The notes under the pieces: model-generated | Seen by the model: the letters and a program-made list of their open reading frames with translations, nothing else | The model's database searches: none | What the model was told of the DNA's origin: nothing | In this document: positions 15,511-53,115 of the stretch, piece by piece | How positions within the stretch are numbered: the first letter of the stretch is position 1 | How the letters are laid out: every line of letters starts with the position of its first letter | IMG/VR virus record: IMGVR_UViG_3300031669_000001 | Coordinates: 186,001 to 250,000 of that record | DNA: 64,000 bases | Reading direction: 5' to 3' (one strand) | Program-made: the position numbers and the translations under genes

Positions 15511-15747
15511 TTAGGTTGCATCTGCATTTGCAGCAGCTTCTGCTTCAGCGGCTTCAGCAGCTTCAGCAGCTTCTGCTTCTTGACGTGCAGTGATTTCTTC
15601 TTCAGTTTCTACGTGTGGTGGATTAACACGATCGCGCATCTTTGCGCCTAATGCATCGTGAAAATTTGCTTTGGCAGCGTCCGGTTCATCCTTGATGAAG
15701 TTAGTGATCAAGTCCTTCAAGGTAGCTTTCATTTCGTCCTTATCCAT
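15511..15747 (-). CDS. putative prohead core/scaffold-like small protein
   Basis: Acidic EA-rich tail; TATAAATA late promoter near 15793-15800. Confidence 0.45.
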   Translation of the reverse strand: MDKDEMKATLKDLITNFIKDEPDAAKANFHDALGAKMRDRVNPPHVETEEEITARQEAEAAEAAEAAEAEAAANADAT

Positions 15748-16916: not shown

Positions 16917-16992
16917 TGGTCGCCCTGGAGGGATTCGAACCCTCGATCGCGATTTTAGAGATCGCAGCTTTACCGCTAAGCATTACAAGGCG
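16917..16992 (-). tRNA. amber suppressor tRNA (anticodon CTA)
   Basis: Acceptor CGCCTTG/CAGGGCG-A-CCA, anticodon arm GCGAT-CTCTAAA-ATCGC, T arm GAGGG-TTCGAAT-CCCTC. Confidence 0.88.
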
Positions 16993-20485: not shown

Positions 20486-21043
20486 CTACGCTTTTATCCA
20501 ACCCTTGTCTTCAAGGATTTGAATTATTTTGCCGGCACAATCACGACCAAATTTCATTCTTTGATAGCCTGTAGATCTTTCATCAAGCAGCTTCAAAATT
20601 TTATTGTCAAGCTCGATAGCTTCTTCTTTCGTTTGGCTTCTTCCAGTTGGATCATAAGACCTACCACGATCAATAAAGATGTCCAAGTTATCGTATTGAG
20701 CGTAAGCTTCATATACCACGCCCTTCAACGATTGCATCGGCCACTGTGGAGTGATGTACGCCAAGCTCATCAAGATTGGACTGTCTGTGATGACAAGTTC
20801 AACCTCATCTACAACGTTAGCTAGCCTAAAGTGCTGCTTGCCGAAGATGTATTCTTGCGCGCGAAACAGCTTGTTGCCACGCTTTTCCCAAGTAGCATCC
20901 TTTGCATACTCGAGAATTTCTTCTACTGATTTCTCCTGAAACTTCAGCTCAGCAAACGTTGCTGCTCTGATTGTGCTTTTACCAGCGCCAGGCCCACCGT
21001 ACAGATTGATCACTCTTGGTTTTTGAACGTATAGTCCTGTCAT
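20486..21043 (-). CDS. P-loop nucleotide kinase (NadR/AAA_28-like)
   Basis: GGPGAGKST, EYAKD, ITDSP, GR.Q. Confidence 0.8.
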   Translation of the reverse strand: MTGLYVQKPRVINLYGGPGAGKSTIRAATFAELKFQEKSVEEILEYAKDATWEKRGNKLFRAQEYIFGKQHFRLANVVDEVELVITDSPILMSLAYITPQWPMQSLKGVVYEAYAQYDNLDIFIDRGRSYDPTGRSQTKEEAIELDNKILKLLDERSTGYQRMKFGRDCAGKIIQILEDKGWIKA

Positions 21044-22374
21044 TCTTCTCTCTCATTCCATTTAGTTATTGCATCACCCATAACAAGACCAGTGTTGGAT
21101 CCAATCATGTAAGGTACTGATGGTCCTTGCGCTCCGCATTCACAAGTAACGTACACACGAACGGCAGGTTGACCATCGTAACCTATTCCAGTCGGTTGTT
21201 CACCACAGAACGGGCACAGTTCCAGTTGAGGATCACTCAACGCTTTCTTGACGGTAGCCTTCTTCGTATCATTTACAAAATCTTTGATTTCAGAAGGCTT
21301 CATGCCTTTGACAGCTTCTGTAAAGTCCAACTGTAACAAACGTGACACAGCGTGCTCCAATTGGATCAAAAATTTCTTCGAGCGCTTCATGTGAGTTTGA
21401 GTCATCGAGTTGATGAACTTTGAAACTTCTCTCAGCTTAACGCTCTTAACTTCTTCTCTGAACGAATTGACAACGTTGACGATCGGTTGTAGCAGAGGAT
21501 CTTCTTTGATCTTCAAGTCAGACTCGAACAATTCATTGATGAAGACACAGTTGTAGATCGCCTCGATGAACTTGCATTCACGAACGACATTAGTTGGAAC
21601 CCTAAAGGTTTCCAATTCTTTGTGAGTGAGATTTGTTACGTTCAAGCTCAAGAACATCTTCTGAACTGGAGTTAACGTAGATTCGATGTCATGCTCAAAT
21701 TCACTGAAATCGTGTTGACGATCCTTGACCAGACCACGTAGACGATTTACTTTATGTATCGCACCGATCTTCGACAAGAAATTCAAGCCTATGCTTGAAT
21801 GCTTCTCGGAAAATAATTTTTCCAATTCACCCCAGATGCGATCAGCAGACAGCGCGTCCAGTTCACCAGCGTTCACCAAATTTCTGCACAGCTCAATGGT
21901 GTCAGAGTGAATCAAGAAGCCGTAGCGAGCTGCGAAGCGAGCAACTCTCATGACGCGCAGAGGGTCTTCAGCGAACGCATCGCTGACGTGGCGGATGATA
22001 CCATTCTTCAGGTCTTCCATGCCGTTGAAAGGATCGATGTACTGATTGCCGTGACTCATTGCGATTGAATTTATCGTCAGATCACGACGAGACAGATCCT
22101 CTTCCAATGTAACGTCAGGGCTGAATTCAACTTCAAAGCCATGGTAGCCAGCAGCGACTTTCTTTTCGCGGCGAGCTAAAGCGTATTCTGAACCGTTTTC
22201 AGGGTGAAGGAAGACTGGAAAAGCGGCACCGACCTGCTTGTAACCTCGTTCAAGCATCCACTCAGGACTAGCACCGACTACAACGTAGTCGAAGTCCTTC
22301 GGAATGTTGCCGAGGATCAGGTCTCGAACGGCACCACCAACGAGATAAATTTGAGGATTCATTTCAGTTTTCAT
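21040..22374 (-). CDS. cca: tRNA nucleotidyltransferase (CCA-adding) with C-terminal CPFCG zinc-ribbon
   Basis: VGGAVRD, D.D, EEDL.RRDLTIN, EDPLR..R.ARF. Confidence 0.92.
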   Translation of the reverse strand: MKTEMNPQIYLVGGAVRDLILGNIPKDFDYVVVGASPEWMLERGYKQVGAAFPVFLHPENGSEYALARREKKVAAGYHGFEVEFSPDVTLEEDLSRRDLTINSIAMSHGNQYIDPFNGMEDLKNGIIRHVSDAFAEDPLRVMRVARFAARYGFLIHSDTIELCRNLVNAGELDALSADRIWGELEKLFSEKHSSIGLNFLSKIGAIHKVNRLRGLVKDRQHDFSEFEHDIESTLTPVQKMFLSLNVTNLTHKELETFRVPTNVVRECKFIEAIYNCVFINELFESDLKIKEDPLLQPIVNVVNSFREEVKSVKLREVSKFINSMTQTHMKRSKKFLIQLEHAVSRLLQLDFTEAVKGMKPSEIKDFVNDTKKATVKKALSDPQLELCPFCGEQPTGIGYDGQPAVRVYVTCECGAQGPSVPYMIGSNTGLVMGDAITKWNEREE

Positions 22375-38881: not shown

Positions 38882-38981
38882 TGGTAGTCCCGCTCGGACT
38901 CGAACCGAGAATGTGCGCTAATCTGGCGCCACAGAGTGCCACTTTATAAGGGTGGTGTTTTACCAATTAAACTACAGGACC
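38882..38981 (-). tRNA. tRNA-Ile(TAT) with long variable arm
   Basis: GGTCCTG/CGGGACT, loop CTTATAA, CCA. Confidence 0.8.
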
Positions 38982-42620: not shown

Positions 42621-42742
42621 TGGTGGACATCACGAGAATCGAACTCGCTATCTTCAGGCGAAGCATATACCAAAGTTTACACTCATCCAGAGACCCCCAT
42701 TTGGTGGAGATTACGGGAATCGAACCCGCATACCTGATGCCC
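42621..42742 (-). ncRNA. two tandem tRNA-Ala-like pieces with swapped acceptor strands
   Basis: Two T arms and two ACCA ends; GGGCATC pairs 7/7 with the distal GATGTCC. Confidence 0.6.
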
Positions 42743-46170: not shown

Positions 46171-46246
46171 TGGTGCACGGTGAAGGACTCGAACCTTCAT
46201 AATCAATCTTGTAAGGATTGCGGCTGACCTCTCACACCAACCGTGC
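46171..46246 (-). tRNA. tRNA-Val(TAC)
   Basis: Loop CTTACAA, CCA. Confidence 0.82.
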
Positions 46247-46451
46247 ATTGAGCAGTGGACAACTTCATCCACTGCACGTGGCTAGATGAACTACTCTGCC
46301 ATGTAAGCGGTCGTTTTTTCACTCCACAAGAGGAGCTTCATCCCGATTAATGTAACGGCAACCGTTACAAGCCACGCCCTCATTCGTCTAATTTTAAAGT
46401 GCCGACAGCGATCGCGTTCCGCATTGCACTTTTTACTGCTTTGAAAACAAC

Positions 46452-46474
46452 CGAGGAACCTTGAAGGTTCCTCG
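46452..46474 (-). terminator. terminator-like hairpin in front of the tRNA array
   Basis: CGAGGAACCTT/AAGGTTCCTCG followed by GTTGTTTT. Confidence 0.6.
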
Positions 46475-46500
46475 CTTTTGGATTACTAATTTAGGTTCTC

Positions 46501-46632
46501 TTAGTTCTGAGTTCCTGCTCCAATTACGAGGTTCTTTACTCTTTCATTCACGGCTGGCTGATTTACCTCACGGTTAATCCTGCAATCGCGTGCATGTTGT
46601 GTAAAGGGTTTCATTGTTATGGTAGTTTTCAT
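46501..46632 (-). CDS. 43-aa leader-like peptide
   Basis: Starts just after TATAAATA (46638-46645) and ends just before the hairpin. Confidence 0.4.
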   Translation of the reverse strand: MKTTITMKPFTQHARDCRINREVNQPAVNERVKNLVIGAGTQN

Positions 46633-46942
46633 GATTTTATTTATATGACAGCAAAAAATTCCAAATAAGTTAAGGTTCAAAGAACCATTAAGAGTGCTGC
46701 TTAGTTTTCAGCTTTGTAGTGAAAGTACATCACTGATCTTCAGACTAGCACTTTTAATGTTTCCTTCAAAGAAGCATTAAGGATGATTTTAAGTATCTTA
46801 GCTCTGAATCAGTAATCCACTTTAGCGTGGAACTTTATTCATCGTCAGGGTTACATACGATCATCTTTAATGTTTCCTCATCGATAAAAGCATTATAACA
46901 CGCTCTTCCAAAAAGTACATTACTTTGTGCAACTATTTTCAA

Positions 46943-47092
46943 AAGTACTCTGCAGGATAATCTCTCCGCTCTACCATTTGAGCTACCCAGCAGCGTTTGG
47001 CTACCGAGGCTGGATTCGAACCAACATCTGACTATGATCAATGATCCCATGCACGGAGGTCATTGACTGCAAAATTATCCTGCAAAGTACTT
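46943..47092 (-). ncRNA. permuted tRNA mimic closed by a 19-bp terminal stem
   Basis: T arm GTTGG-TTCGAAT-CCAGC, stem CTCGGTAGC/GCTGCTGGG, TA, D arm GCTC-AAATGGTA-GAGC. Confidence 0.7.
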
Positions 47093-47096
47093 GAGG

Positions 47097-47308
47097 TGGC
47101 GCTCTCGCAAGGATTCGAACCTCGACCTTGATGCCATTCACACGTGTTCGATAGGAAGTGGTAGACACATACGTGTCACTAACTACTAACGTGCTATCTT
47201 CATCAACATTACCCCGTGCCTTACCAATGCCTTTGATATTACGTTTGCACAACTCGTTTGACCCACAACAGTTCGCACGAGAATCTCAGGTTAGTCGGAT
47301 ACGAGAGC
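47097..47308 (-). ncRNA. 212-nt RNA with tRNA-like acceptor stem, T arm and CCA
   Basis: GCTCTCG/CGAGAGC-G-CCA; CGAGG-TTCGAAT-CCTTG. Confidence 0.7.
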
Positions 47309-47969
47309 GTAACCTCAAGTACTTTGCAGAAGAAACTCGTCTGAGGATTCGAACCTCTTAAGAGTGTGCGCACACCATACACCGAAATGTACCCCGTATA
47401 TCCACCACGGGCAAAGCTCTTTGATAAAACGGCTGCAGACCGGTAAATCTAGAGTAAGTTTCTTCAGCAAAGCACTTCAAATTTTATCTAACGGAGGTAG
47501 TTCGTCCGTTAGGGTAACTCATTTGAGTTACCTTTTAGCTCCAGAGGTAATTCGTCTGGACGGCAAGGGTGGTTAATCCCTTCTGTTCAAATTCTCTTTC
47601 GTCGACGGTCTGAGGATTCGAATCTCAGATTTGCCGCTCCGATGGCGCCATCTCGGCGAAAAAGAACTTTGTGAGGCTGCTTCAGCGAACGTTGTAGTGC
47701 ATGCGCTCAACATCCGACTTCCAGGATCCGTGCATCGCATGCGAGCCGATGCCTGGTATGCTTTTACATTACAAAAGCAGCTTTACAAAAGACGCCGTCA
47801 CGAACATTATACCGAAGAAAACCCATCCAACAAACGCGTCTTCCTTGTCGGTTTCCATAATCAACTGTCCAAGCAAAAAACCTGCTTACTAACCTAAATA
47901 GCACCAAGAGTTTCTCTGCCAAGCCATTGTAAAAATTGAATTATTTCTCTCATGCTTTACTCGTTGCAT

Positions 47970-48311
47970 CTACTGACAAACAGAAACAGTTGAGCACTTT
48001 TTGATAATTTCTTCAGTATTAATTGCGTCTACGTTACCTTTTGCTTGCGCGACCTGATCTTCATGATCTCCCCCCAGCTTACTTGCTGGAATGAGGAACA
48101 AGAAAACGGTAGCTGCATCAACATTTGCAGAATGATCCTGTGCAGCAGACGATACAGCAAGTTGCGTCTTTGCATTACACATAGCAGTTGATAACTCAGA
48201 GCACGAAAGGTTCGTGTATTTCTGCGGCGATACATAATCTGCATGAATACTCTCGGGACGAGTGGCACAACCAGCTAATAAAATTGCTGCTATAACTAAA
48301 ATCTTTTTCAT
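47970..48311 (-). CDS. lipoprotein
   Basis: Lipobox LLAGC. Confidence 0.8.
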   Translation of the reverse strand: MKKILVIAAILLAGCATRPESIHADYVSPQKYTNLSCSELSTAMCNAKTQLAVSSAAQDHSANVDAATVFLFLIPASKLGGDHEDQVAQAKGNVDAINTEEIIKKCSTVSVCQ

Positions 48312-48440
48312 TAAATTTTCCTTTAAAATTGAATTATTTCGCGCACTTCTTAGCGACTGCGAATCTAACCTTTCAAATCAATTCCTTTGTTGTTTGAATC
48401 GATAAAAGCATTATAACATGATCTACAGAAAAGTACACTA

Positions 48441-48650
48441 CTATTTACGAACTATTTGCACTATTTCACGGGAAGTAATGATCCTGCACTTTGATTCGAT
48501 CTCAGCGATTCGTTTCTTTGGGATGTCGTAATGATCTTTGTGGAACCAACAGGGCTTTATGTCGAGCTGTCGAGCCATCTCGTGAAGATTCTCGATAGAG
48601 TATGGAAGGCAGATAAGATGACGTGAACCGTCTGTAAGATATTCTAGCAT
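48441..48650 (-). CDS. DUF4031-like small protein
   Basis: HL......LH..A..L.I...WF...HYD. Confidence 0.65.
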   Translation of the reverse strand: MLEYLTDGSRHLICLPYSIENLHEMARQLDIKPCWFHKDHYDIPKKRIAEIESKCRIITSREIVQIVRK

Positions 48651-50434: not shown

Positions 50435-51496
50435 TTATCGTCGAATGACAGTTGTACCTTCGCTAAACGTGTCAGGCCTAAAGTTTGCAAGGTCGAGAGT
50501 TGAGATCCCGAGGGCAACTGTTACATCATACAGAATGGCTGTGACCTCTGCGGCGCTAAGTTTTCCTACCTTCATGTATTCTAGCAAGGCATCTGAGGTT
50601 TTGCAGTAAGCTATCAGGTTTTGGTTTGGCACCTGCTTTATTTTGGATTCTAGATGTGCTATCTGCTTTAAAGCTTCTTCAACATTCTCTGTATTTTGAA
50701 TCGTGAGAAATTCGATCTTAGAGTTCAACGATTCATTAGCTTTTTCGAGAGCTGTTATCTGATCGAGGGCTTCAGTTAAACCGTCATTGGCAGCTCGCAT
50801 AGTGCTGACAAATTGTTTTGTCATCTTGATCTGATGCTTCATTCGAAGCATGATCGTTTGATACGCGTGTTGGTACTCAGGGAACAACTTCATCGCGGTC
50901 TTCAACATAGACAAGAATATCGTCTCTGCTTCTGACCCGTACTGATCCATCTTGTCGACGGTGAACACATCGATCATGTGTTCAAGGTTATCGCATCGAT
51001 CAAGACCCTTAACGATAGATGCCGCTATCAGTTTCGCGATGTCTCTGATGTAAGTTTCTTTGTTCTTGTGTTCACCAGCGAATTTTTTGGTCAGCGCCCA
51101 GGTGTTTACGCTTACCTTTTCACCAAAGATTTGTGTGATCTGCTCGGTGGGTACGTCGTGATCTTCTTGAGAATCGTGAAGGAGCGCGATGACGATGCAA
51201 AGTTCTTCAATGTCGTCTGGAAGACCTTTGAGTTGAGTGACAGATAGGGCGATGCGGACTTGATGATGAAGGCTCGGAGTTACCTTGTCCTTGCGGAATC
51301 GCTGTTCAGCTGGAAGTCTGAACTCCAACTGCTCTATGAATCCAAGCGCTCGAATGCCTTGGACGTAGCCTTTGCCGAGCATGTAATACTTGAGCGCAGT
51401 CTTCTCTCGTTGAAACTGAAGTGCGTGTCGTTGTAAAACAGCTTTCATTGAATCAACGTCAGCGCCAGATTGATCGAGTATGTTAAAGTCAGTCAT
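50435..51496 (-). CDS. RelA/SpoT-type HD hydrolase with coiled-coil C-terminus
   Basis: RKD..TP...H, ALLHD..ED, LTK, K..DR.DN. Confidence 0.8.
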   Translation of the reverse strand: MTDFNILDQSGADVDSMKAVLQRHALQFQREKTALKYYMLGKGYVQGIRALGFIEQLEFRLPAEQRFRKDKVTPSLHHQVRIALSVTQLKGLPDDIEELCIVIALLHDSQEDHDVPTEQITQIFGEKVSVNTWALTKKFAGEHKNKETYIRDIAKLIAASIVKGLDRCDNLEHMIDVFTVDKMDQYGSEAETIFLSMLKTAMKLFPEYQHAYQTIMLRMKHQIKMTKQFVSTMRAANDGLTEALDQITALEKANESLNSKIEFLTIQNTENVEEALKQIAHLESKIKQVPNQNLIAYCKTSDALLEYMKVGKLSAAEVTAILYDVTVALGISTLDLANFRPDTFSEGTTVIRR

Positions 51497-51549
51497 AGAT
51501 TCTCCAATAGATGAATCATTATAACACACTTTATACAGAAAGGAAACAG

Positions 51550-51574
51550 AAAAAGGGGAGATTTCTCTCCCCTT
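51550..51574 (-). terminator. intrinsic terminator
   Basis: AAGGGGAGA/TCTCCCCTT plus U run. Confidence 0.7.
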
Positions 51575-51593
51575 ATGAAACTCCGGTGAACCC

Positions 51594-52319
51594 TTATTTC
51601 TTGTCAGATGGTGTGTTTGCGGTCACTGACTTATTTTTGATGTCATCATAAAGCTTAGACATGTCTACTCCAGCCGCTGCAGAGCACGCTCCGTCTGCGT
51701 AGTTGAATGAAGCTCCGCGCATCGATGAAGTTGCAAAGTTCACAGCTGTCATCGCGTCTAAAGTTCCAGTCTTGGTGTAGTCAAACGTCACTGAGTTGCT
51801 AGCCTTGATCCCCATTGAGGTTCCAACTGAACGAGCATCCATGTTGGTTCCTAGAAACAGAACTTCCCAGCCGTGTTCACCTTCAACGCCGCTGATCAAT
51901 TCCTTAACCTTAGCGTAGGTGTATTCTTTGCTGGCGTTCTCTTGTCCATCGGTCAAGATAGCTACGATCGTCTTCGTGTTCTTTGGATTTTCATCCTTGA
52001 ACGTGGAGATAGTTCTACCAACAGCGTCATAGAGAGCTGTGTAACCACGCGGTTGGAATGTGCTTGCATTTAGATCAGGCACGTTTTCGAGAGGAACGTT
52101 GTCGTGAACGACAAGATACTCATGGTCGAATTGAACCAACGATACTGTTACCTTACCTGGAACTTCCTTCTGACCTGCCAAGAAGGCATTGAACCCGCCG
52201 ATCGTTTCTTCCTTGATAGAGCTCATTGAACCCGAGCGATCGAGAATGAAGAAGATGCGAGCGTTAGCAGGCTTTTTGGATTTGGATTTTTTCTTTGGGG
52301 TTATCATTTTGTCTGTCAT
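51594..52319 (-). CDS. vWA domain protein
   Basis: DRSGSM, T.LYDA, LTDG.ENAS. Confidence 0.88.
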   Translation of the reverse strand: MTDKMITPKKKSKSKKPANARIFFILDRSGSMSSIKEETIGGFNAFLAGQKEVPGKVTVSLVQFDHEYLVVHDNVPLENVPDLNASTFQPRGYTALYDAVGRTISTFKDENPKNTKTIVAILTDGQENASKEYTYAKVKELISGVEGEHGWEVLFLGTNMDARSVGTSMGIKASNSVTFDYTKTGTLDAMTAVNFATSSMRGASFNYADGACSAAAGVDMSKLYDDIKNKSVTANTPSDKK

Positions 52320-52329
52320 TTTGTTCTCC

Positions 52330-53115
52330 TTAATAGATGATTTGTAGTGACGCGCCGCAGTTGGAACAGAATTTAGCGGAGGTTGATTTGCTGAGATATC
52401 CACACGAGTCGCATTCTGTCTTGCTGCGGGTGGTGACTGCGTTAGAAACGGATTTTCCTAGATGTTCTCCAAGCAGACGTAAGATCATCACGTGCTTGTG
52501 AGGTTCAAGTGCAAAGTTAGCAACCGAATTGAACTCCTGATCTGATACAGATCCAGGGGCTGTAATTCCAACACAGTTAGTGTATGCTCCAGGTATAGCA
52601 GCTGTGGAATTACTTGCTCCTATCGCACTGCTGTTTGCGCAAAAACCTCTAGCCATCAACGGGGATGGATCTCCAGTTGAACCGGCTGAATTCCAGAACG
52701 GAGGATAATTCGGTGGGGGATAAGGTTGATGCCAATTTGGAGTTACAGTCGTGATCGTTTGGATCACCTTTTCAAATTGAAACTCAACTCGAACTAAGCC
52801 ATCATCGACTCTGATACCTCGATGCTTTTCTATCGCTGAATTGCGCGCGATAAATTTGAATCGATTTCCTCGATCTAGATTGCCGTTCTTGATGAACCGT
52901 TCTAACTCTATTTCATCGTTAGGATCAACGACTAAAGATACTCCCTGCGTCGCATCGACTCCATCAATCTCGATCTTAACAGAAGCCCTGACAGAGTTCT
53001 TGTTCTTGATAAAGATGCTGTATTCGGTTTGAAATGGGAGGTAAACCTGATCTTCGAATTCTCGAAGTGCTTTGCCGTTAGCCTTGATGGCCACAGCGAG
53101 TTTATTGCTGTACAT
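52330..53115 (-). CDS. hypothetical protein with C-terminal double zinc ribbon
   Basis: CxxCG...KFCxxCG. Confidence 0.75.
   Translation of the reverse strand: MYSNKLAVAIKANGKALREFEDQVYLPFQTEYSIFIKNKNSVRASVKIEIDGVDATQGVSLVVDPNDEIELERFIKNGNLDRGNRFKFIARNSAIEKHRGIRVDDGLVRVEFQFEKVIQTITTVTPNWHQPYPPPNYPPFWNSAGSTGDPSPLMARGFCANSSAIGASNSTAAIPGAYTNCVGITAPGSVSDQEFNSVANFALEPHKHVMILRLLGEHLGKSVSNAVTTRSKTECDSCGYLSKSTSAKFCSNCGASLQIIY

What the first reader, a model, noticed from the sequence alone, without database searches (positions are those of the whole stretch)
47097..47308. 212-nt RNA with tRNA ends but no D or anticodon arm
Seen: a perfect acceptor stem, G73-CCA and a T arm surround about 175 nt with helices (CTCGT/ACGAG, ACACGT/ACGTGT, ACTAAC/GTTAGT). 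The topology is tmRNA-like, but it lacks G3:U70, and I see no group I intron core. One frame is open through the second half. Inference: a non-alanine tmRNA analogue or a novel tRNA-ended RNA.
Basis: partly seen in the sequence, partly recalled or inferred. Interest (0 to 1): 0.6.

Follow-up and report, generated by a model that had tools for sequence, protein, structure and literature searches.

The report
Abundant tRNA-ended phage RNA
A 345-kb soil jumbo phage makes an abundant 212-nt RNA with the acceptor stem, T arm and CCA tail of a tRNA but two long hairpin arms where the D and anticodon arms should be; it is a tRNA mimic built like phage T4's unexplained 'species 1' RNA, and it is neither a tmRNA nor an intron-containing tRNA.

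Summary
On the minus strand, 47308->47097, a perfect 7-bp acceptor stem and U8-A9 lead into about 175 nt. A canonical T arm, G73 and an encoded CCA follow. This combination appeared in none of 20 shuffles of the whole genome. It is expressed: a soil metatranscriptome holds a 217-nt contig (depth 194, 0 mismatches) on 47097-47313. That contig ends on the A of CCA and starts 5 nt before G1, while the flanks have depth 0-10. A second RNA study also holds the element.

It is not a tmRNA. It has U3:A70, no tag-like frame and no ARAGORN or Rfam match, and the phage already has a genuine permuted tmRNA elsewhere. It is not a tRNA with one intron: 0 of 1575 single-deletion variants gave a tRNA, against 328 of 1575 for a relative's D-loop-interrupted tRNA-Arg. 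No group I core was found.

The constrained fold is a 'giant cloverleaf'. The closest known object is T4 RNA C (species 1 RNA), whose function is unknown. The element lies between two stem-enclosed, Y-RNA-like genes, in a phage that encodes Ro60 and a CCA-adding enzyme. No homologue was found, so the inner structure and the function remain inferred. The most likely role is a non-decoding tRNA mimic matured by tRNA enzymes.

The parts
47097..47308 (-). The 212-nt tRNA-ended RNA gene (RNA nt i = window 47309 - i).
   Evidence: Sequence. RNA contig on 47097-47313, depth 193.8, 0 mismatches in run X2, and a contig on 47129-47294 in run X6.
47302..47308 (-). Acceptor stem, 5' strand GCUCUCG (nt 1-7). 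U8-A9 follow at 47301-47300.
   Evidence: Perfect Watson-Crick pairing with 47101-47107.
47214..47299 (-). 5' domain (nt 10-95), in the place of a D arm. Long irregular hairpin, weakly predicted.
   Evidence: Constrained fold, pair probabilities about 0.5-0.75. No comparative support.
47125..47209 (-). 3' long arm (nt 100-184), in the place of the anticodon arm and variable region. It is capped by GACAC-GUAU-GUGUC and abuts the T stem.
   Evidence: Constrained fold, most pairs with probability above 0.85. No comparative support.
47108..47124 (-). T arm CGAGG-UUCGAAU-CCUUG (nt 185-201).
   Evidence: Sequence. Canonical 5-bp stem, 7-nt loop, G53:C61.
47097..47107 (-). Acceptor 3' strand CGAGAGC (47107-47101), discriminator G73 (47100), encoded CCA (47099-47097).
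   Evidence: Sequence. The RNA contig ends at 47097.
47309..47313 (-). 5-nt leader GUUAC, present in the RNA contig.
   Evidence: record 3 of run X2.
47313..47337 (-). Spacer c' (core CUGCAAAGUACUU plus GAGG). It is the 3' strand of the terminal stem of the upstream element 3, and it is also complementary to spacer b'.
   Evidence: Inverted repeats I1 and I2.
47074..47096 (-). Spacer b' (CCUC plus AAGUACUUUGCAGGAUAAU). It is the 5' strand of the terminal stem of the downstream element 1, and it is also complementary to c'.
   Evidence: Inverted repeats I1 and I3. The b':a' stem covaries with the relative L006.
48398..48442 (-). T4-early-type promoter copy (-10 TATAAT). It is the nearest upstream promoter for the 113-aa ORF plus the RNA cassette. 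A second copy at 46880-46924 lies just downstream of the cassette.
   Evidence: Direct repeat D1. Same promoter type in relatives L006, L007 and L013. Function inferred.
21040..22374 (-). Phage CCA-adding enzyme or poly(A) polymerase family protein. It could maintain the CCA end.
   Evidence: Pfam PolyA_pol head domain, E = 4.8e-21. The link to this RNA is inferred.

Best explanation
It is a non-decoding tRNA mimic: a small stable RNA encoded at the head of the phage's tRNA array.

How it is most likely made:
- It is transcribed with its neighbours as part of a longer early transcript and then cut out.
- Its 3' end is trimmed to the genome-encoded CCA.
- Its acceptor-stem/T-arm helix is a textbook substrate for RNase P, 3' trimming and the CCA-adding enzyme, which the phage also encodes. 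This helix gives it tRNA-like ends and tRNA-like stability.

The D arm and the anticodon arm are each replaced by a hairpin arm of about 85 nt (a 'giant cloverleaf'), so it cannot read a codon.

Its most likely job is to present a tRNA acceptor end to proteins that recognise tRNA. It could be a decoy for host factors or defence nucleases and transferases that act on tRNA acceptor/CCA ends. It could also be an extra RNA partner in the phage's Ro60/Y-RNA system, whose Y-like genes flank it.

Shown: the sequence features, the expression, the abundance, and the 3' end at CCA. Inferred: the processing enzymes, the inner fold and the function.
For: - Canonical acceptor stem, U8-A9, T arm, G73 and CCA. 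This never arose in 20 genome shuffles.
- Same strand as the 40-odd-tRNA array and directly upstream of it. Most tRNA genes of the phage also encode CCA.
- Run X2 (metatranscriptome) holds a 217-nt contig at depth 193.8 with 0 mismatches on 47097-47313. Neighbouring bins are at depth 0-10, and the upstream ORF is at 4.8.
- Run X6, an independent RNA study, holds a contig on 47129-47294.
- The flanking repeats are shorter than the assembler's 31-mers, so the contig ends reflect coverage drops and not repeat breaks.
- There is no D or anticodon arm by ARAGORN, Rfam or the deletion scan.
- With the acceptor stem and T arm fixed, the fold gives a four-way junction with a confident 3' arm.
- T4 rnaC, in the T4 tRNA cluster, has the same logic. 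The phage uses T4-type early and late promoters and a T4-type DNA polymerase.
- The phage encodes a CCA-adding enzyme and Ro60.
- Relatives carry other long tRNA-ended RNAs at the same locus.
Against: - No homologue of this RNA was found, so no covariation supports the inner arms.
- The interior folds no better than shuffled sequence (z = +0.8).
- The cassette is absent or different in the closest long relatives (L007) and in a roughly 97-98% identical strain that diverges at 47788. That fits a dispensable or fast-evolving element as well as a functional one.
- The RNA evidence comes from assembled contigs, not raw reads. The exact 5' end, the strand and any untemplated CCA are therefore not shown, and the contig keeps a 5-nt leader that RNase P should remove.
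- No binding partner has been tested.
Confidence: 0.6

Rival explanations
1. It is a decayed or chimeric tRNA gene remnant with no function of its own. Recombination, insertion and decay in a homing-endonuclease-rich tRNA array destroyed the D and anticodon arms. The transcript accumulates only because the surviving acceptor/T-arm helix still protects its ends.
For: - The array is full of broken or odd tRNA-like pieces, for example nested fragments at 42621-42742 and several T loops outside any tRNA.
- GIY-YIG and DUF559 endonuclease genes are interspersed in the array.
- A relative has a tRNA-Arg(UCU) with a roughly 105-nt D-loop insertion, a plausible intermediate.
- The interior shows no excess stability, and there is no homologue elsewhere.
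- The cassette varies between close relatives.
- A 17-nt stretch of the 5' domain resembles half of a neighbouring T-arm-like hairpin (repeat D7).
Against: - The acceptor stem (7 of 7 Watson-Crick pairs), U8-A9, the T arm, G73 and CCA are all intact, while everything else has been replaced. That pattern looks selective.
- It is the most abundant RNA of the locus in an environmental metatranscriptome.
- T4 and the relative L013 keep comparable long tRNA-ended RNAs.
Confidence: 0.22
2. It is a Y RNA (YrlB-like): a specific RNA partner of the phage Ro60 protein, working with the two stem-enclosed tRNA-like RNAs that flank it.
For: - The phage encodes a 516-aa TROVE/Ro60 protein.
- The downstream neighbour is a circularly permuted tRNA-like RNA that gives the best, though sub-threshold, YrlA match in the genome at 30 bits. 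Its long terminal stem covaries with a relative.
- Bacterial Y RNAs come in adjacent pairs cut from one precursor. Some carry T arms and receive CCA (PMC4201824).
Against: - The abundant RNA excludes the flanking complementary spacers, so it has no long terminal stem.
- The Ro60-binding motif GNCGAAN0-1G is absent from it. The sequence holds only UGCGAAC and AUCGAAC.
- The YrlA model does not match it.
- The Ro60 gene lies about 100 kb away, and no RtcB is present.
- The YrlA model also gives weak hits in 13 of 14 control genomes.
Confidence: 0.1
3. It is a tRNA interrupted by one or more introns or insertions and is spliced to a functional tRNA.
For: - tRNA-like termini, in a tRNA array.
- A relative has a clear tRNA-Arg(UCU) with a D-loop insertion.
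Against: - 0 of 1575 single-deletion variants are recognised as a tRNA, against 328 of 1575 for the positive control.
- No 5-bp stem with a 7-nt loop lies at the anticodon position.
- No group I or group II intron match in the element, even at E<=10.
- The full-length form is the abundant one, and no joints were seen. That evidence comes from contigs only.
Confidence: 0.04
4. It is a tmRNA analogue charged with an amino acid other than alanine, which rescues ribosomes.
For: - The acceptor stem, T arm and CCA lack a D stem, as in the tRNA-like domain of a tmRNA.
- In two relatives the same locus holds a tmRNA.
Against: - U3:A70, not G3:U70.
- No tmRNA match by ARAGORN or Rfam.
- The frames give either no stop (third frame) or a 30-34-codon frame ending ...KIAR, which is unlike any degradation tag.
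- A genuine permuted tmRNA is already present in the genome.
- No phage SmpB.
- No similarity to the tmRNAs of this phage or its relatives.
Confidence: 0.02

Closest known systems
Bacteriophage T4 RNA C (species 1 RNA, gene rnaC) and RNA D (species 2), the small stable RNAs of the T4 tRNA cluster
   Same: - Encoded on the tRNA strand at one end of a phage tRNA cluster.
- Accumulates as a discrete small stable RNA.
- rnaC ends with a canonical T arm (CCGGG-UUCGAAU-CCCGG) followed directly by a 7-nt strand that pairs upstream, while the rest of the body is not tRNA-like.
- RNA D ends in ...CACC(A).
- Function still unknown (PMC3014915; PMC9697503).
- The phage here has a T4-like DNA polymerase and T4-like early and late promoter motifs.
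   Different: - No sequence similarity beyond the 11-nt T loop.
- This RNA is 212 nt, against 139 nt (RNA C) and 119 nt (RNA D).
- Here the acceptor stem is perfect and made by the very 5' end, and CCA is encoded. In rnaC the best partner of the 3' strand is internal and the gene ends ...CGUA.
- There is no curated family to test against. Rfam has none.
YrlA / bacterial Y RNAs (Rfam RF02553), partners of Ro60
   Same: - tRNA mimicry, with a T arm and CCA possible.
- A Ro60 gene is in the genome.
- Several adjacent RNAs are cut from one precursor.
- The immediate neighbour (46943-47096) is YrlA-like.
   Different: - Normal tRNA connectivity, not permuted.
- No D arm.
- No long terminal stem in the mature RNA.
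- No GNCGAAN0-1G motif.
- No model match.
tmRNA (ssrA)
   Same: An acceptor stem, T arm and CCA enclose a large non-tRNA insert. There is no D stem.
   Different: - No G3:U70.
- No tag frame.
- No pseudoknot or model match.
- The phage has its own permuted tmRNA elsewhere.
Intron-containing or insertion-containing tRNAs (bacterial group I tRNA introns; the D-loop-interrupted tRNA-Arg(UCU) of the relative L013)
   Same: tRNA termini around a long insert. Same genomic neighbourhood in the relative.
   Different: Removing any single segment does not restore a cloverleaf, there is no anticodon arm, and there is no intron core.

Membership tests
tmRNA | tRNA-like domain: acceptor stem, T arm, 3' CCA, no D stem | tested here: met
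   Sequence.
tmRNA | G3:U70 alanine identity pair | tested here: not met
   Position 3:70 is U:A.
tmRNA | Internal tag reading frame with resume codon and stop, encoding a degradation tag | tested here: not met
   Three-frame translation. One frame has no stop. Another is 30-34 codons ending KIAR. ARAGORN tmRNA mode finds none, even at a relaxed threshold.
tmRNA | Match to tmRNA covariance models (helix 2, pseudoknots) | tested here: not met
   No Rfam tmRNA family matches at E<=10 over 46200-48200. The same library finds the phage's true tmRNA at 84.5 bits.
Intron-containing tRNA | A cloverleaf (D arm, anticodon arm) is restored when one insert is removed | tested here: not met
   0 of 1575 deletion variants are called a tRNA by ARAGORN. 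The control L013:14052-14234 gives tRNA-Arg(tct) in 328 of 1575.
Intron-containing tRNA | Group I (or II) intron catalytic core | tested here: not met
   No Intron_gpI hit, and no group II hit inside the element, at E<=10. The insert of about 175 nt is also short for a group I intron (own knowledge).
Intron-containing tRNA | A spliced form exists in RNA | tested here: inconclusive
   No joints were reported and the full-length form is abundant. Only assembled contigs were available, and these drop rare forms.
YrlA / Y RNA | Ro60 (TROVE) protein encoded by the same genome | tested here: met
   516-aa TROVE ORF at genome 331733-333283. It is about 100 kb away, not adjacent.
YrlA / Y RNA | Long stem formed by the RNA's own 5' and 3' ends, carrying the Ro60-binding motif GNCGAAN0-1G (PMC4201824) | tested here: not met
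   The RNA contig excludes the complementary spacers. The motif is absent from the 212 nt.
YrlA / Y RNA | Permuted tRNA-like module (T arm, closed acceptor hairpin, D arm), or a match to RF02553 | tested here: not met
   No RF02553 hit on the element. Connectivity is that of a normal tRNA and there is no D arm.
T4 RNA C-type stable RNA of phage tRNA clusters (no formal family) | Encoded in or next to a phage tRNA gene cluster, on the same strand | tested here: met
T4 RNA C-type stable RNA of phage tRNA clusters (no formal family) | Accumulates as a discrete small RNA | tested here: met
   Depth 193.8 against 0-10 for the flanks in run X2, and a second study X6. The evidence is at contig level.
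T4 RNA C-type stable RNA of phage tRNA clusters (no formal family) | 3' T arm followed directly by a 7-nt strand paired with an upstream strand; the body is not a cloverleaf | tested here: met
   for this RNA. for T4 rnaC.
T4 RNA C-type stable RNA of phage tRNA clusters (no formal family) | Sequence or profile homology to T4 rnaC or rnaD | tested here: not met
   Only the 11-nt T loop aligns.
Canonical tRNA | Match to the tRNA covariance model or ARAGORN | tested here: not met
Any aminoacylated RNA | Charged 3' end in vivo | not testable with these tools
   Needs an acid gel or periodate assay. From textbook identity rules (own knowledge), most synthetases that accept G73 tRNAs also need the anticodon, which is absent.

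The most novel reading that the evidence does not exclude
The RNA is aminoacylated despite lacking an anticodon. One route would be a synthetase that reads the acceptor end plus a long arm emerging next to the T stem, as SerRS reads type II tRNAs. It would then act as a charged tRNA mimic, either on the ribosome or in a non-ribosomal aminoacyl-transfer or sensing pathway, or as bait for defence enzymes that attack charged or CCA ends. That would make it a new functional class of phage tRNA-ended RNA, of which T4 RNA C would be the long-unexplained first example.
Probability: 0.05. Interest if true: 0.85.

Novelty: new member of a known kind. Interest (0 to 1): 0.45.

Why it matters
Phage tRNA clusters have been known since the 1970s to carry small stable RNAs that are not tRNAs (T4 RNA C and RNA D). 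Their role is still unknown. This element shows that the same design exists in a distant soil jumbo phage: a bare acceptor/T-arm/CCA end on a non-tRNA body. It is abundant enough to stand out in environmental metatranscriptomes. It also sits between Y-RNA-like genes in a genome that encodes Ro60 and a CCA-adding enzyme. That gives concrete, testable candidates for what such RNAs bind. On the practical side, tRNA finders and Rfam miss the whole cassette.

Tried and rejected
- Detection programs. ARAGORN in default, intron and tmRNA modes found nothing real, and the relaxed thresholds gave only implausible calls. Rfam at gathering thresholds and at E<=10 gave no hit on the element.
- Search for homologues. 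All of these were blank or hit only the own contig:
  - blastn against GenBank phages;
  - exact patterns in IMG/VR;
  - one exact 25-mer in JGI metagenomes, which returned only the own contig.
  The flank 17-mer hit three unrelated coding regions.
- Protein-guided searches with the neighbouring 113-aa and HD proteins found nothing in IMG/VR.
- Relatives were reached instead through homologues of the HD-domain protein. None carries this RNA.
  - L007, at 58% HD-protein identity, has a different 260-nt insert between the same two promoters.
  - The isolate RsoM2USA has no comparable element in the region examined.
- Antisense targets. Only matches of 16 nt or less, at chance level, occur elsewhere in the phage genome.
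- Coding. Only short ORFs without support overlap the element.
- The extended stem around the element (spacers c':b', 17 bp) was considered as a Y-RNA-type terminal stem or an RNase III site.
  - The RNA contig excludes it.
  - The b':a' pairing of the neighbour covaries.
  - The complementarity is therefore probably a by-product of two paralogous stem-enclosed neighbours. A role in processing is not excluded.
- Sigma-70, MotA-type and late promoter motifs immediately upstream of G1 were inspected by eye and are poor, so a transcription start at 47313 is unlikely.

Full report
**Context.** The window is bases 186001-250000 of a 345,069-bp virus record with direct terminal repeats, that is, a jumbo phage. 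It comes from a soil metagenome.
- The phage carries 53 ARAGORN genes: 52 tRNAs and one tmRNA. All are on the minus strand. 42 lie in the window and a second cluster lies near genome position 313-319 kb.
- It has a T4-type family B DNA polymerase, a UvrD/Dda-like helicase and a CCA-adding-enzyme homologue.
- GIY-YIG and DUF559 endonuclease genes lie between the tRNA genes.
- Its nearest cultured relatives are Ralstonia phage RsoM2USA (DNA polymerase 43% identical), then Xanthomonas phages Xoo-sp13 and XacN1.
- Promoters of the T4 early type (GTTTAC...TATAAT) and a T4 late motif (TATAAATA) recur in the locus and in relatives.

**The observation.** The element reads on the minus strand from 47308 to 47097.
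- nt 1-7 GCUCUCG pair perfectly with nt 202-208.
- U8-A9 follow the 5' strand.
- The T arm CGAGG-UUCGAAU-CCUUG (nt 185-201) abuts the acceptor 3' strand with tRNA geometry.
- G73 and CCA end the element at 47097.
- A strict search for this combination found 12 cases in the real genome, all in the tRNA clusters, and none in 20 dinucleotide shuffles of the whole genome.
- Most tRNA genes of this phage encode CCA as well.
- ARAGORN (default, intron and tmRNA modes) and Rfam (gathering thresholds and E<=10) report nothing for the element.
The whole molecule has z = -0.10 and the interior alone has z = +0.8.
- The 'open frame' is real but has no start codon and no stop inside the RNA.

**Expression.** One search of public sequencing runs found six that hold parts of the locus, two of them metatranscriptomes. 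I laid the assembled contigs of four runs on 46200-48400.
- RNA run X2 has a 217-nt contig at depth 193.8 with no mismatch. It covers exactly 47097-47313, which is the 212-nt element plus GUUAC at its 5' side. It ends on the A of CCA.
- In the same run the bins on either side have depth 0-10. The upstream 113-aa ORF has depth 4.8, and a small downstream mRNA (46417-46639) has depth 76.
- RNA run X6, from another study, holds a contig on 47129-47294.
- The flanking repeats (17 nt or less) are shorter than the assembler's 31-mers, so the contig ends reflect drops in coverage.
- The uneven depth argues against DNA carry-over. The tool notes that contigs cannot prove strand, exact ends or transcription, so this is strong but not final evidence for a discrete, abundant RNA with tRNA-like termini.

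**What it is not.**
- *tmRNA.* Position 3:70 is U:A, there is no tag-like frame, and no tmRNA model matches. The phage has a genuine permuted tmRNA with tag ANDANGALALAA at genome 306555-306937 and no SmpB. In relatives L006 and L013 a tmRNA lies in this very cassette, next to other long tRNA-ended RNAs, so the two are distinct. There is no sequence similarity to any of these tmRNAs.
- *Intron-containing tRNA.* I deleted every contiguous segment that leaves 66-95 nt and ran ARAGORN on all 1575 variants. None was called a tRNA. The same procedure on L013:14052-14234 gave tRNA-Arg(tct) 328 times. No group I hit appears at all, and the only group II hit (E = 0.04) lies on the neighbouring element 1, outside this RNA. 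No joints were seen in the RNA contigs.
- *Y RNA.* The mature RNA lacks a long terminal stem, the motif GNCGAAN0-1G (PMC4201824) is absent, and RF02553 does not match.

**Anatomy.** With the acceptor stem and T arm fixed, the minimum-energy fold is a four-way junction.
- The four arms are the acceptor stem, a weakly predicted 5' domain (nt 10-95), a confidently predicted 3' arm (nt 100-184) and the T arm.
- Most pairs of the 3' arm have probability above 0.85. It has helices UUGAUG/CAUCAA and GCACGU/ACGUGU and the cap GACAC-GUAU-GUGUC.
- This is the connectivity of a cloverleaf in which both the D arm and the anticodon arm are replaced by arms of about 85 nt, with no anticodon loop.
- None of this has comparative support, because no homologue could be found in GenBank phages, IMG/VR or JGI metagenomes.

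**Neighbourhood.** Four spacers share the quasi-palindromic core CUGCAAAGUACUU / AAGUACUUUGCAG. They are d' (47477-47457), c' (47337-47313), b' (47096-47074) and a' (46961-46943).
- d':c' (21 bp) enclose element 3, which contains a T arm.
- b':a' (19 bp) enclose element 1. This is a circularly permuted tRNA-like RNA: a T arm, then an acceptor hairpin closed by a 5-nt loop, then U-A and a canonical D arm. It gives the best YrlA match in the genome, at 30 bits against a threshold of 69.
- The b':a' stem covaries with the homologue in relative L006, with 8 compensatory pairs in that stem among 12 in the whole alignment.
- The 212-nt RNA therefore lies between two paralogous, stem-enclosed, Y-RNA-like genes. 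The 17-bp complementarity of c' and b' around it is probably a by-product of that arrangement.
- The phage encodes a 516-aa TROVE/Ro60 protein about 100 kb away but no RtcB.
- The cassette lies between two copies of the same early-type promoter (48442-48398 and 46924-46880), and no terminator was predicted inside it. This suggests a polycistronic precursor.
- The cassette is hypervariable. L007 (HD protein 58% identical) has an unrelated 260-nt insert between the same promoters. A roughly 97-98% identical strain in runs X3 and X4 diverges from 47788 downstream.
- Relative L013 has, at the same place:
  - a 158-nt and a 145-nt RNA with acceptor stem and T arm;
  - a 183-nt tRNA-Arg(UCU) with a roughly 105-nt D-loop insertion;
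  - a tRNA-like RNA whose anticodon loop is replaced by a UUCG-capped hairpin.

**Closest known.** T4 encodes RNA C (species 1, 139 nt) and RNA D (species 2, 119 nt) at the end of its tRNA cluster.
- rnaC ends with CCGGG-UUCGAAU-CCCGG followed directly by a 7-nt strand that pairs upstream. The rest of its body forms long hairpins.
- Their roles are still unknown (PMC3014915; PMC9697503), and Rfam has no family for them.
- The present RNA shares that design and genomic setting but no sequence beyond the T loop.
- I therefore file it as a new member of this loosely defined kind, not as a homologue.

**Mechanism.**
- Shown: the tRNA-type termini, the abundance, the 3' end at CCA, and the absence of decoding parts.
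- Inferred from established tRNA biology: the 12-bp acceptor/T-arm helix is the minimal substrate for RNase P, 3' exonucleolytic trimming and CCA-adding enzymes, and it protects tRNAs from decay. That would explain both the ends and the abundance.
- The 5-nt leader kept in the contig means that 5' maturation is incomplete or absent in at least some molecules.
- Function is inferred only. The RNA displays a tRNA acceptor end without an anticodon, so it can engage proteins that read the acceptor/T-arm/CCA part of tRNA. Candidates are host tRNA-targeting toxins or defence enzymes, processing enzymes, or the phage Ro60 particle. It cannot take part in decoding.
- The main rival is that it is a stable remnant of tRNA gene decay in a recombination-prone array.

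**Verdict.**
- The tmRNA reading is rejected.
- 'Novel tRNA-ended RNA' is accepted, with the qualification that the kind has a 50-year-old precedent in T4.
- Interest is moderate. The locus as a whole (Y-like RNAs, tRNA mimics, Ro60 and a CCA-adding enzyme in one phage) is more interesting than this element alone.

Noticed in passing
window 46943-47096 (minus): Element 1 is a circularly permuted tRNA-like RNA: a T arm, then a 9-bp acceptor hairpin closed by a 5-nt loop, then U-A and a canonical D arm. It is enclosed by a 19-bp terminal stem. It gives the best, though sub-threshold (30 bits), YrlA match in the genome. A homologue lies at L006:15947-16084, and the terminal stem shows 8 compensatory pairs. 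It is a likely Y RNA for the phage's Ro60. No RNA contig covered it in run X2.
   Followed up: partly
window 47313-47477 (minus): Element 3 is a second RNA enclosed by a 21-bp terminal stem, paralogous to that of element 1. It contains a T-arm-like hairpin (GAGG-UUCGAAU-CCUC) and a GUGUGC/GCACAC hairpin. It may be YrlB-like.
   Followed up: no
window 47480-47660 (minus): A T-arm-like hairpin is followed by GACGAAAG at 47596-47603, which fits the Ro60-binding motif GNCGAAN0-1G. Two hairpins follow (47541-47559 and 47489-47510) with nearly the same 11-nt loop ACGAAYUACCU, separated by a third hairpin. A similar 'T arm ... GUCGAC' piece is in L006 at about 15690-15730.
   Followed up: no
L013:14052-14234: A relative's tRNA-Arg(UCU) has an intact acceptor stem, D stem, anticodon arm and T arm, but a structured insertion of about 105 nt inside the D loop. 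That is an unusual place for a bacterial or phage tRNA insertion. Whether it is spliced is unknown.
   Followed up: partly
L013:13728-13887, L013:13899-14043, L013:15266-15349; L006:15725-15790: Relatives carry further noncanonical tRNA-ended RNAs at the same locus.
- 158-nt and 145-nt RNAs with acceptor stem and T arm. The 145-nt one also has flanking complementary spacers with an AAGUAC core.
- A tRNA-like RNA whose anticodon loop is replaced by a UUCG-capped hairpin.
- A D-arm-less mini version in L006.
- The last two are followed by a conserved tail, CCGAGUACGC...GGAGUUCCGGAUAAAGAAGAGAG.
   Followed up: partly
genome 306555-306937 (outside the window); L006:14640-14966; L013:14383-14709: The phage has a genuine two-piece (permuted) tmRNA with tag ANDANGALALAA. 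In relatives the tmRNA sits in the cassette upstream of the tRNA array. In this phage it sits in the second tRNA cluster. The phage has no SmpB.
   Followed up: partly
window 46417-46646 (minus): A conserved small ORF of about 43-48 aa is preceded by a T4-type late promoter motif TATAAATA (46639-46646) and followed by a strong terminator hairpin (46452-46474). The ORF is present in L006, L007 and L013. An RNA contig at depth 76 lies on it in run X2.
   Followed up: no
window 46250-46440 (minus): A conserved non-coding stretch lies between that terminator and tRNA-Val(UAC). Conserved blocks such as GUGCAAUGCGGAACGCGAUCGC...GGCAC are also seen in L006 and L013. It may be another structured RNA or a leader.
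   Followed up: no
window 42621-42742 (minus): Nested or fragmentary tRNA-like pieces. A 5' strand GGGCAUC pairs with GAUGUCC-ACCA 115 nt downstream. In between lie a complete T arm plus AAUCUCC-ACCA, whose partner strand belongs to a tRNA-Ala gene upstream. Several other T loops in the array lie outside any called tRNA.
   Followed up: no
window 38882-38981 (minus): A 100-nt tRNA (Rfam 54.9 bits, missed by ARAGORN) has an enlarged anticodon loop region (CCUUAUAAA) and a long extra arm. Its identity is unclear.
   Followed up: no
window 16917-16992 (minus): A tRNA with anticodon CUA, which ARAGORN calls 'Pyl'. It is an amber-suppressor-type tRNA standing alone, far from the array. I did not check whether the phage recodes TAG.
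   Followed up: no
window 47785-48396 and runs X3/X4: A roughly 97-98% identical strain in two soil DNA runs shares the 113-aa ORF but diverges completely from 47788 towards the RNA cassette. The cassette is a hypervariable module bounded by two copies of the same promoter.
   Followed up: partly
window 50435-52403 (minus): A conserved gene pair upstream of the cassette: an HD_4 (SpoT-type (p)ppGpp hydrolase-like) protein and a VWA-domain protein. The pair is syntenic in all relatives found.
   Followed up: no
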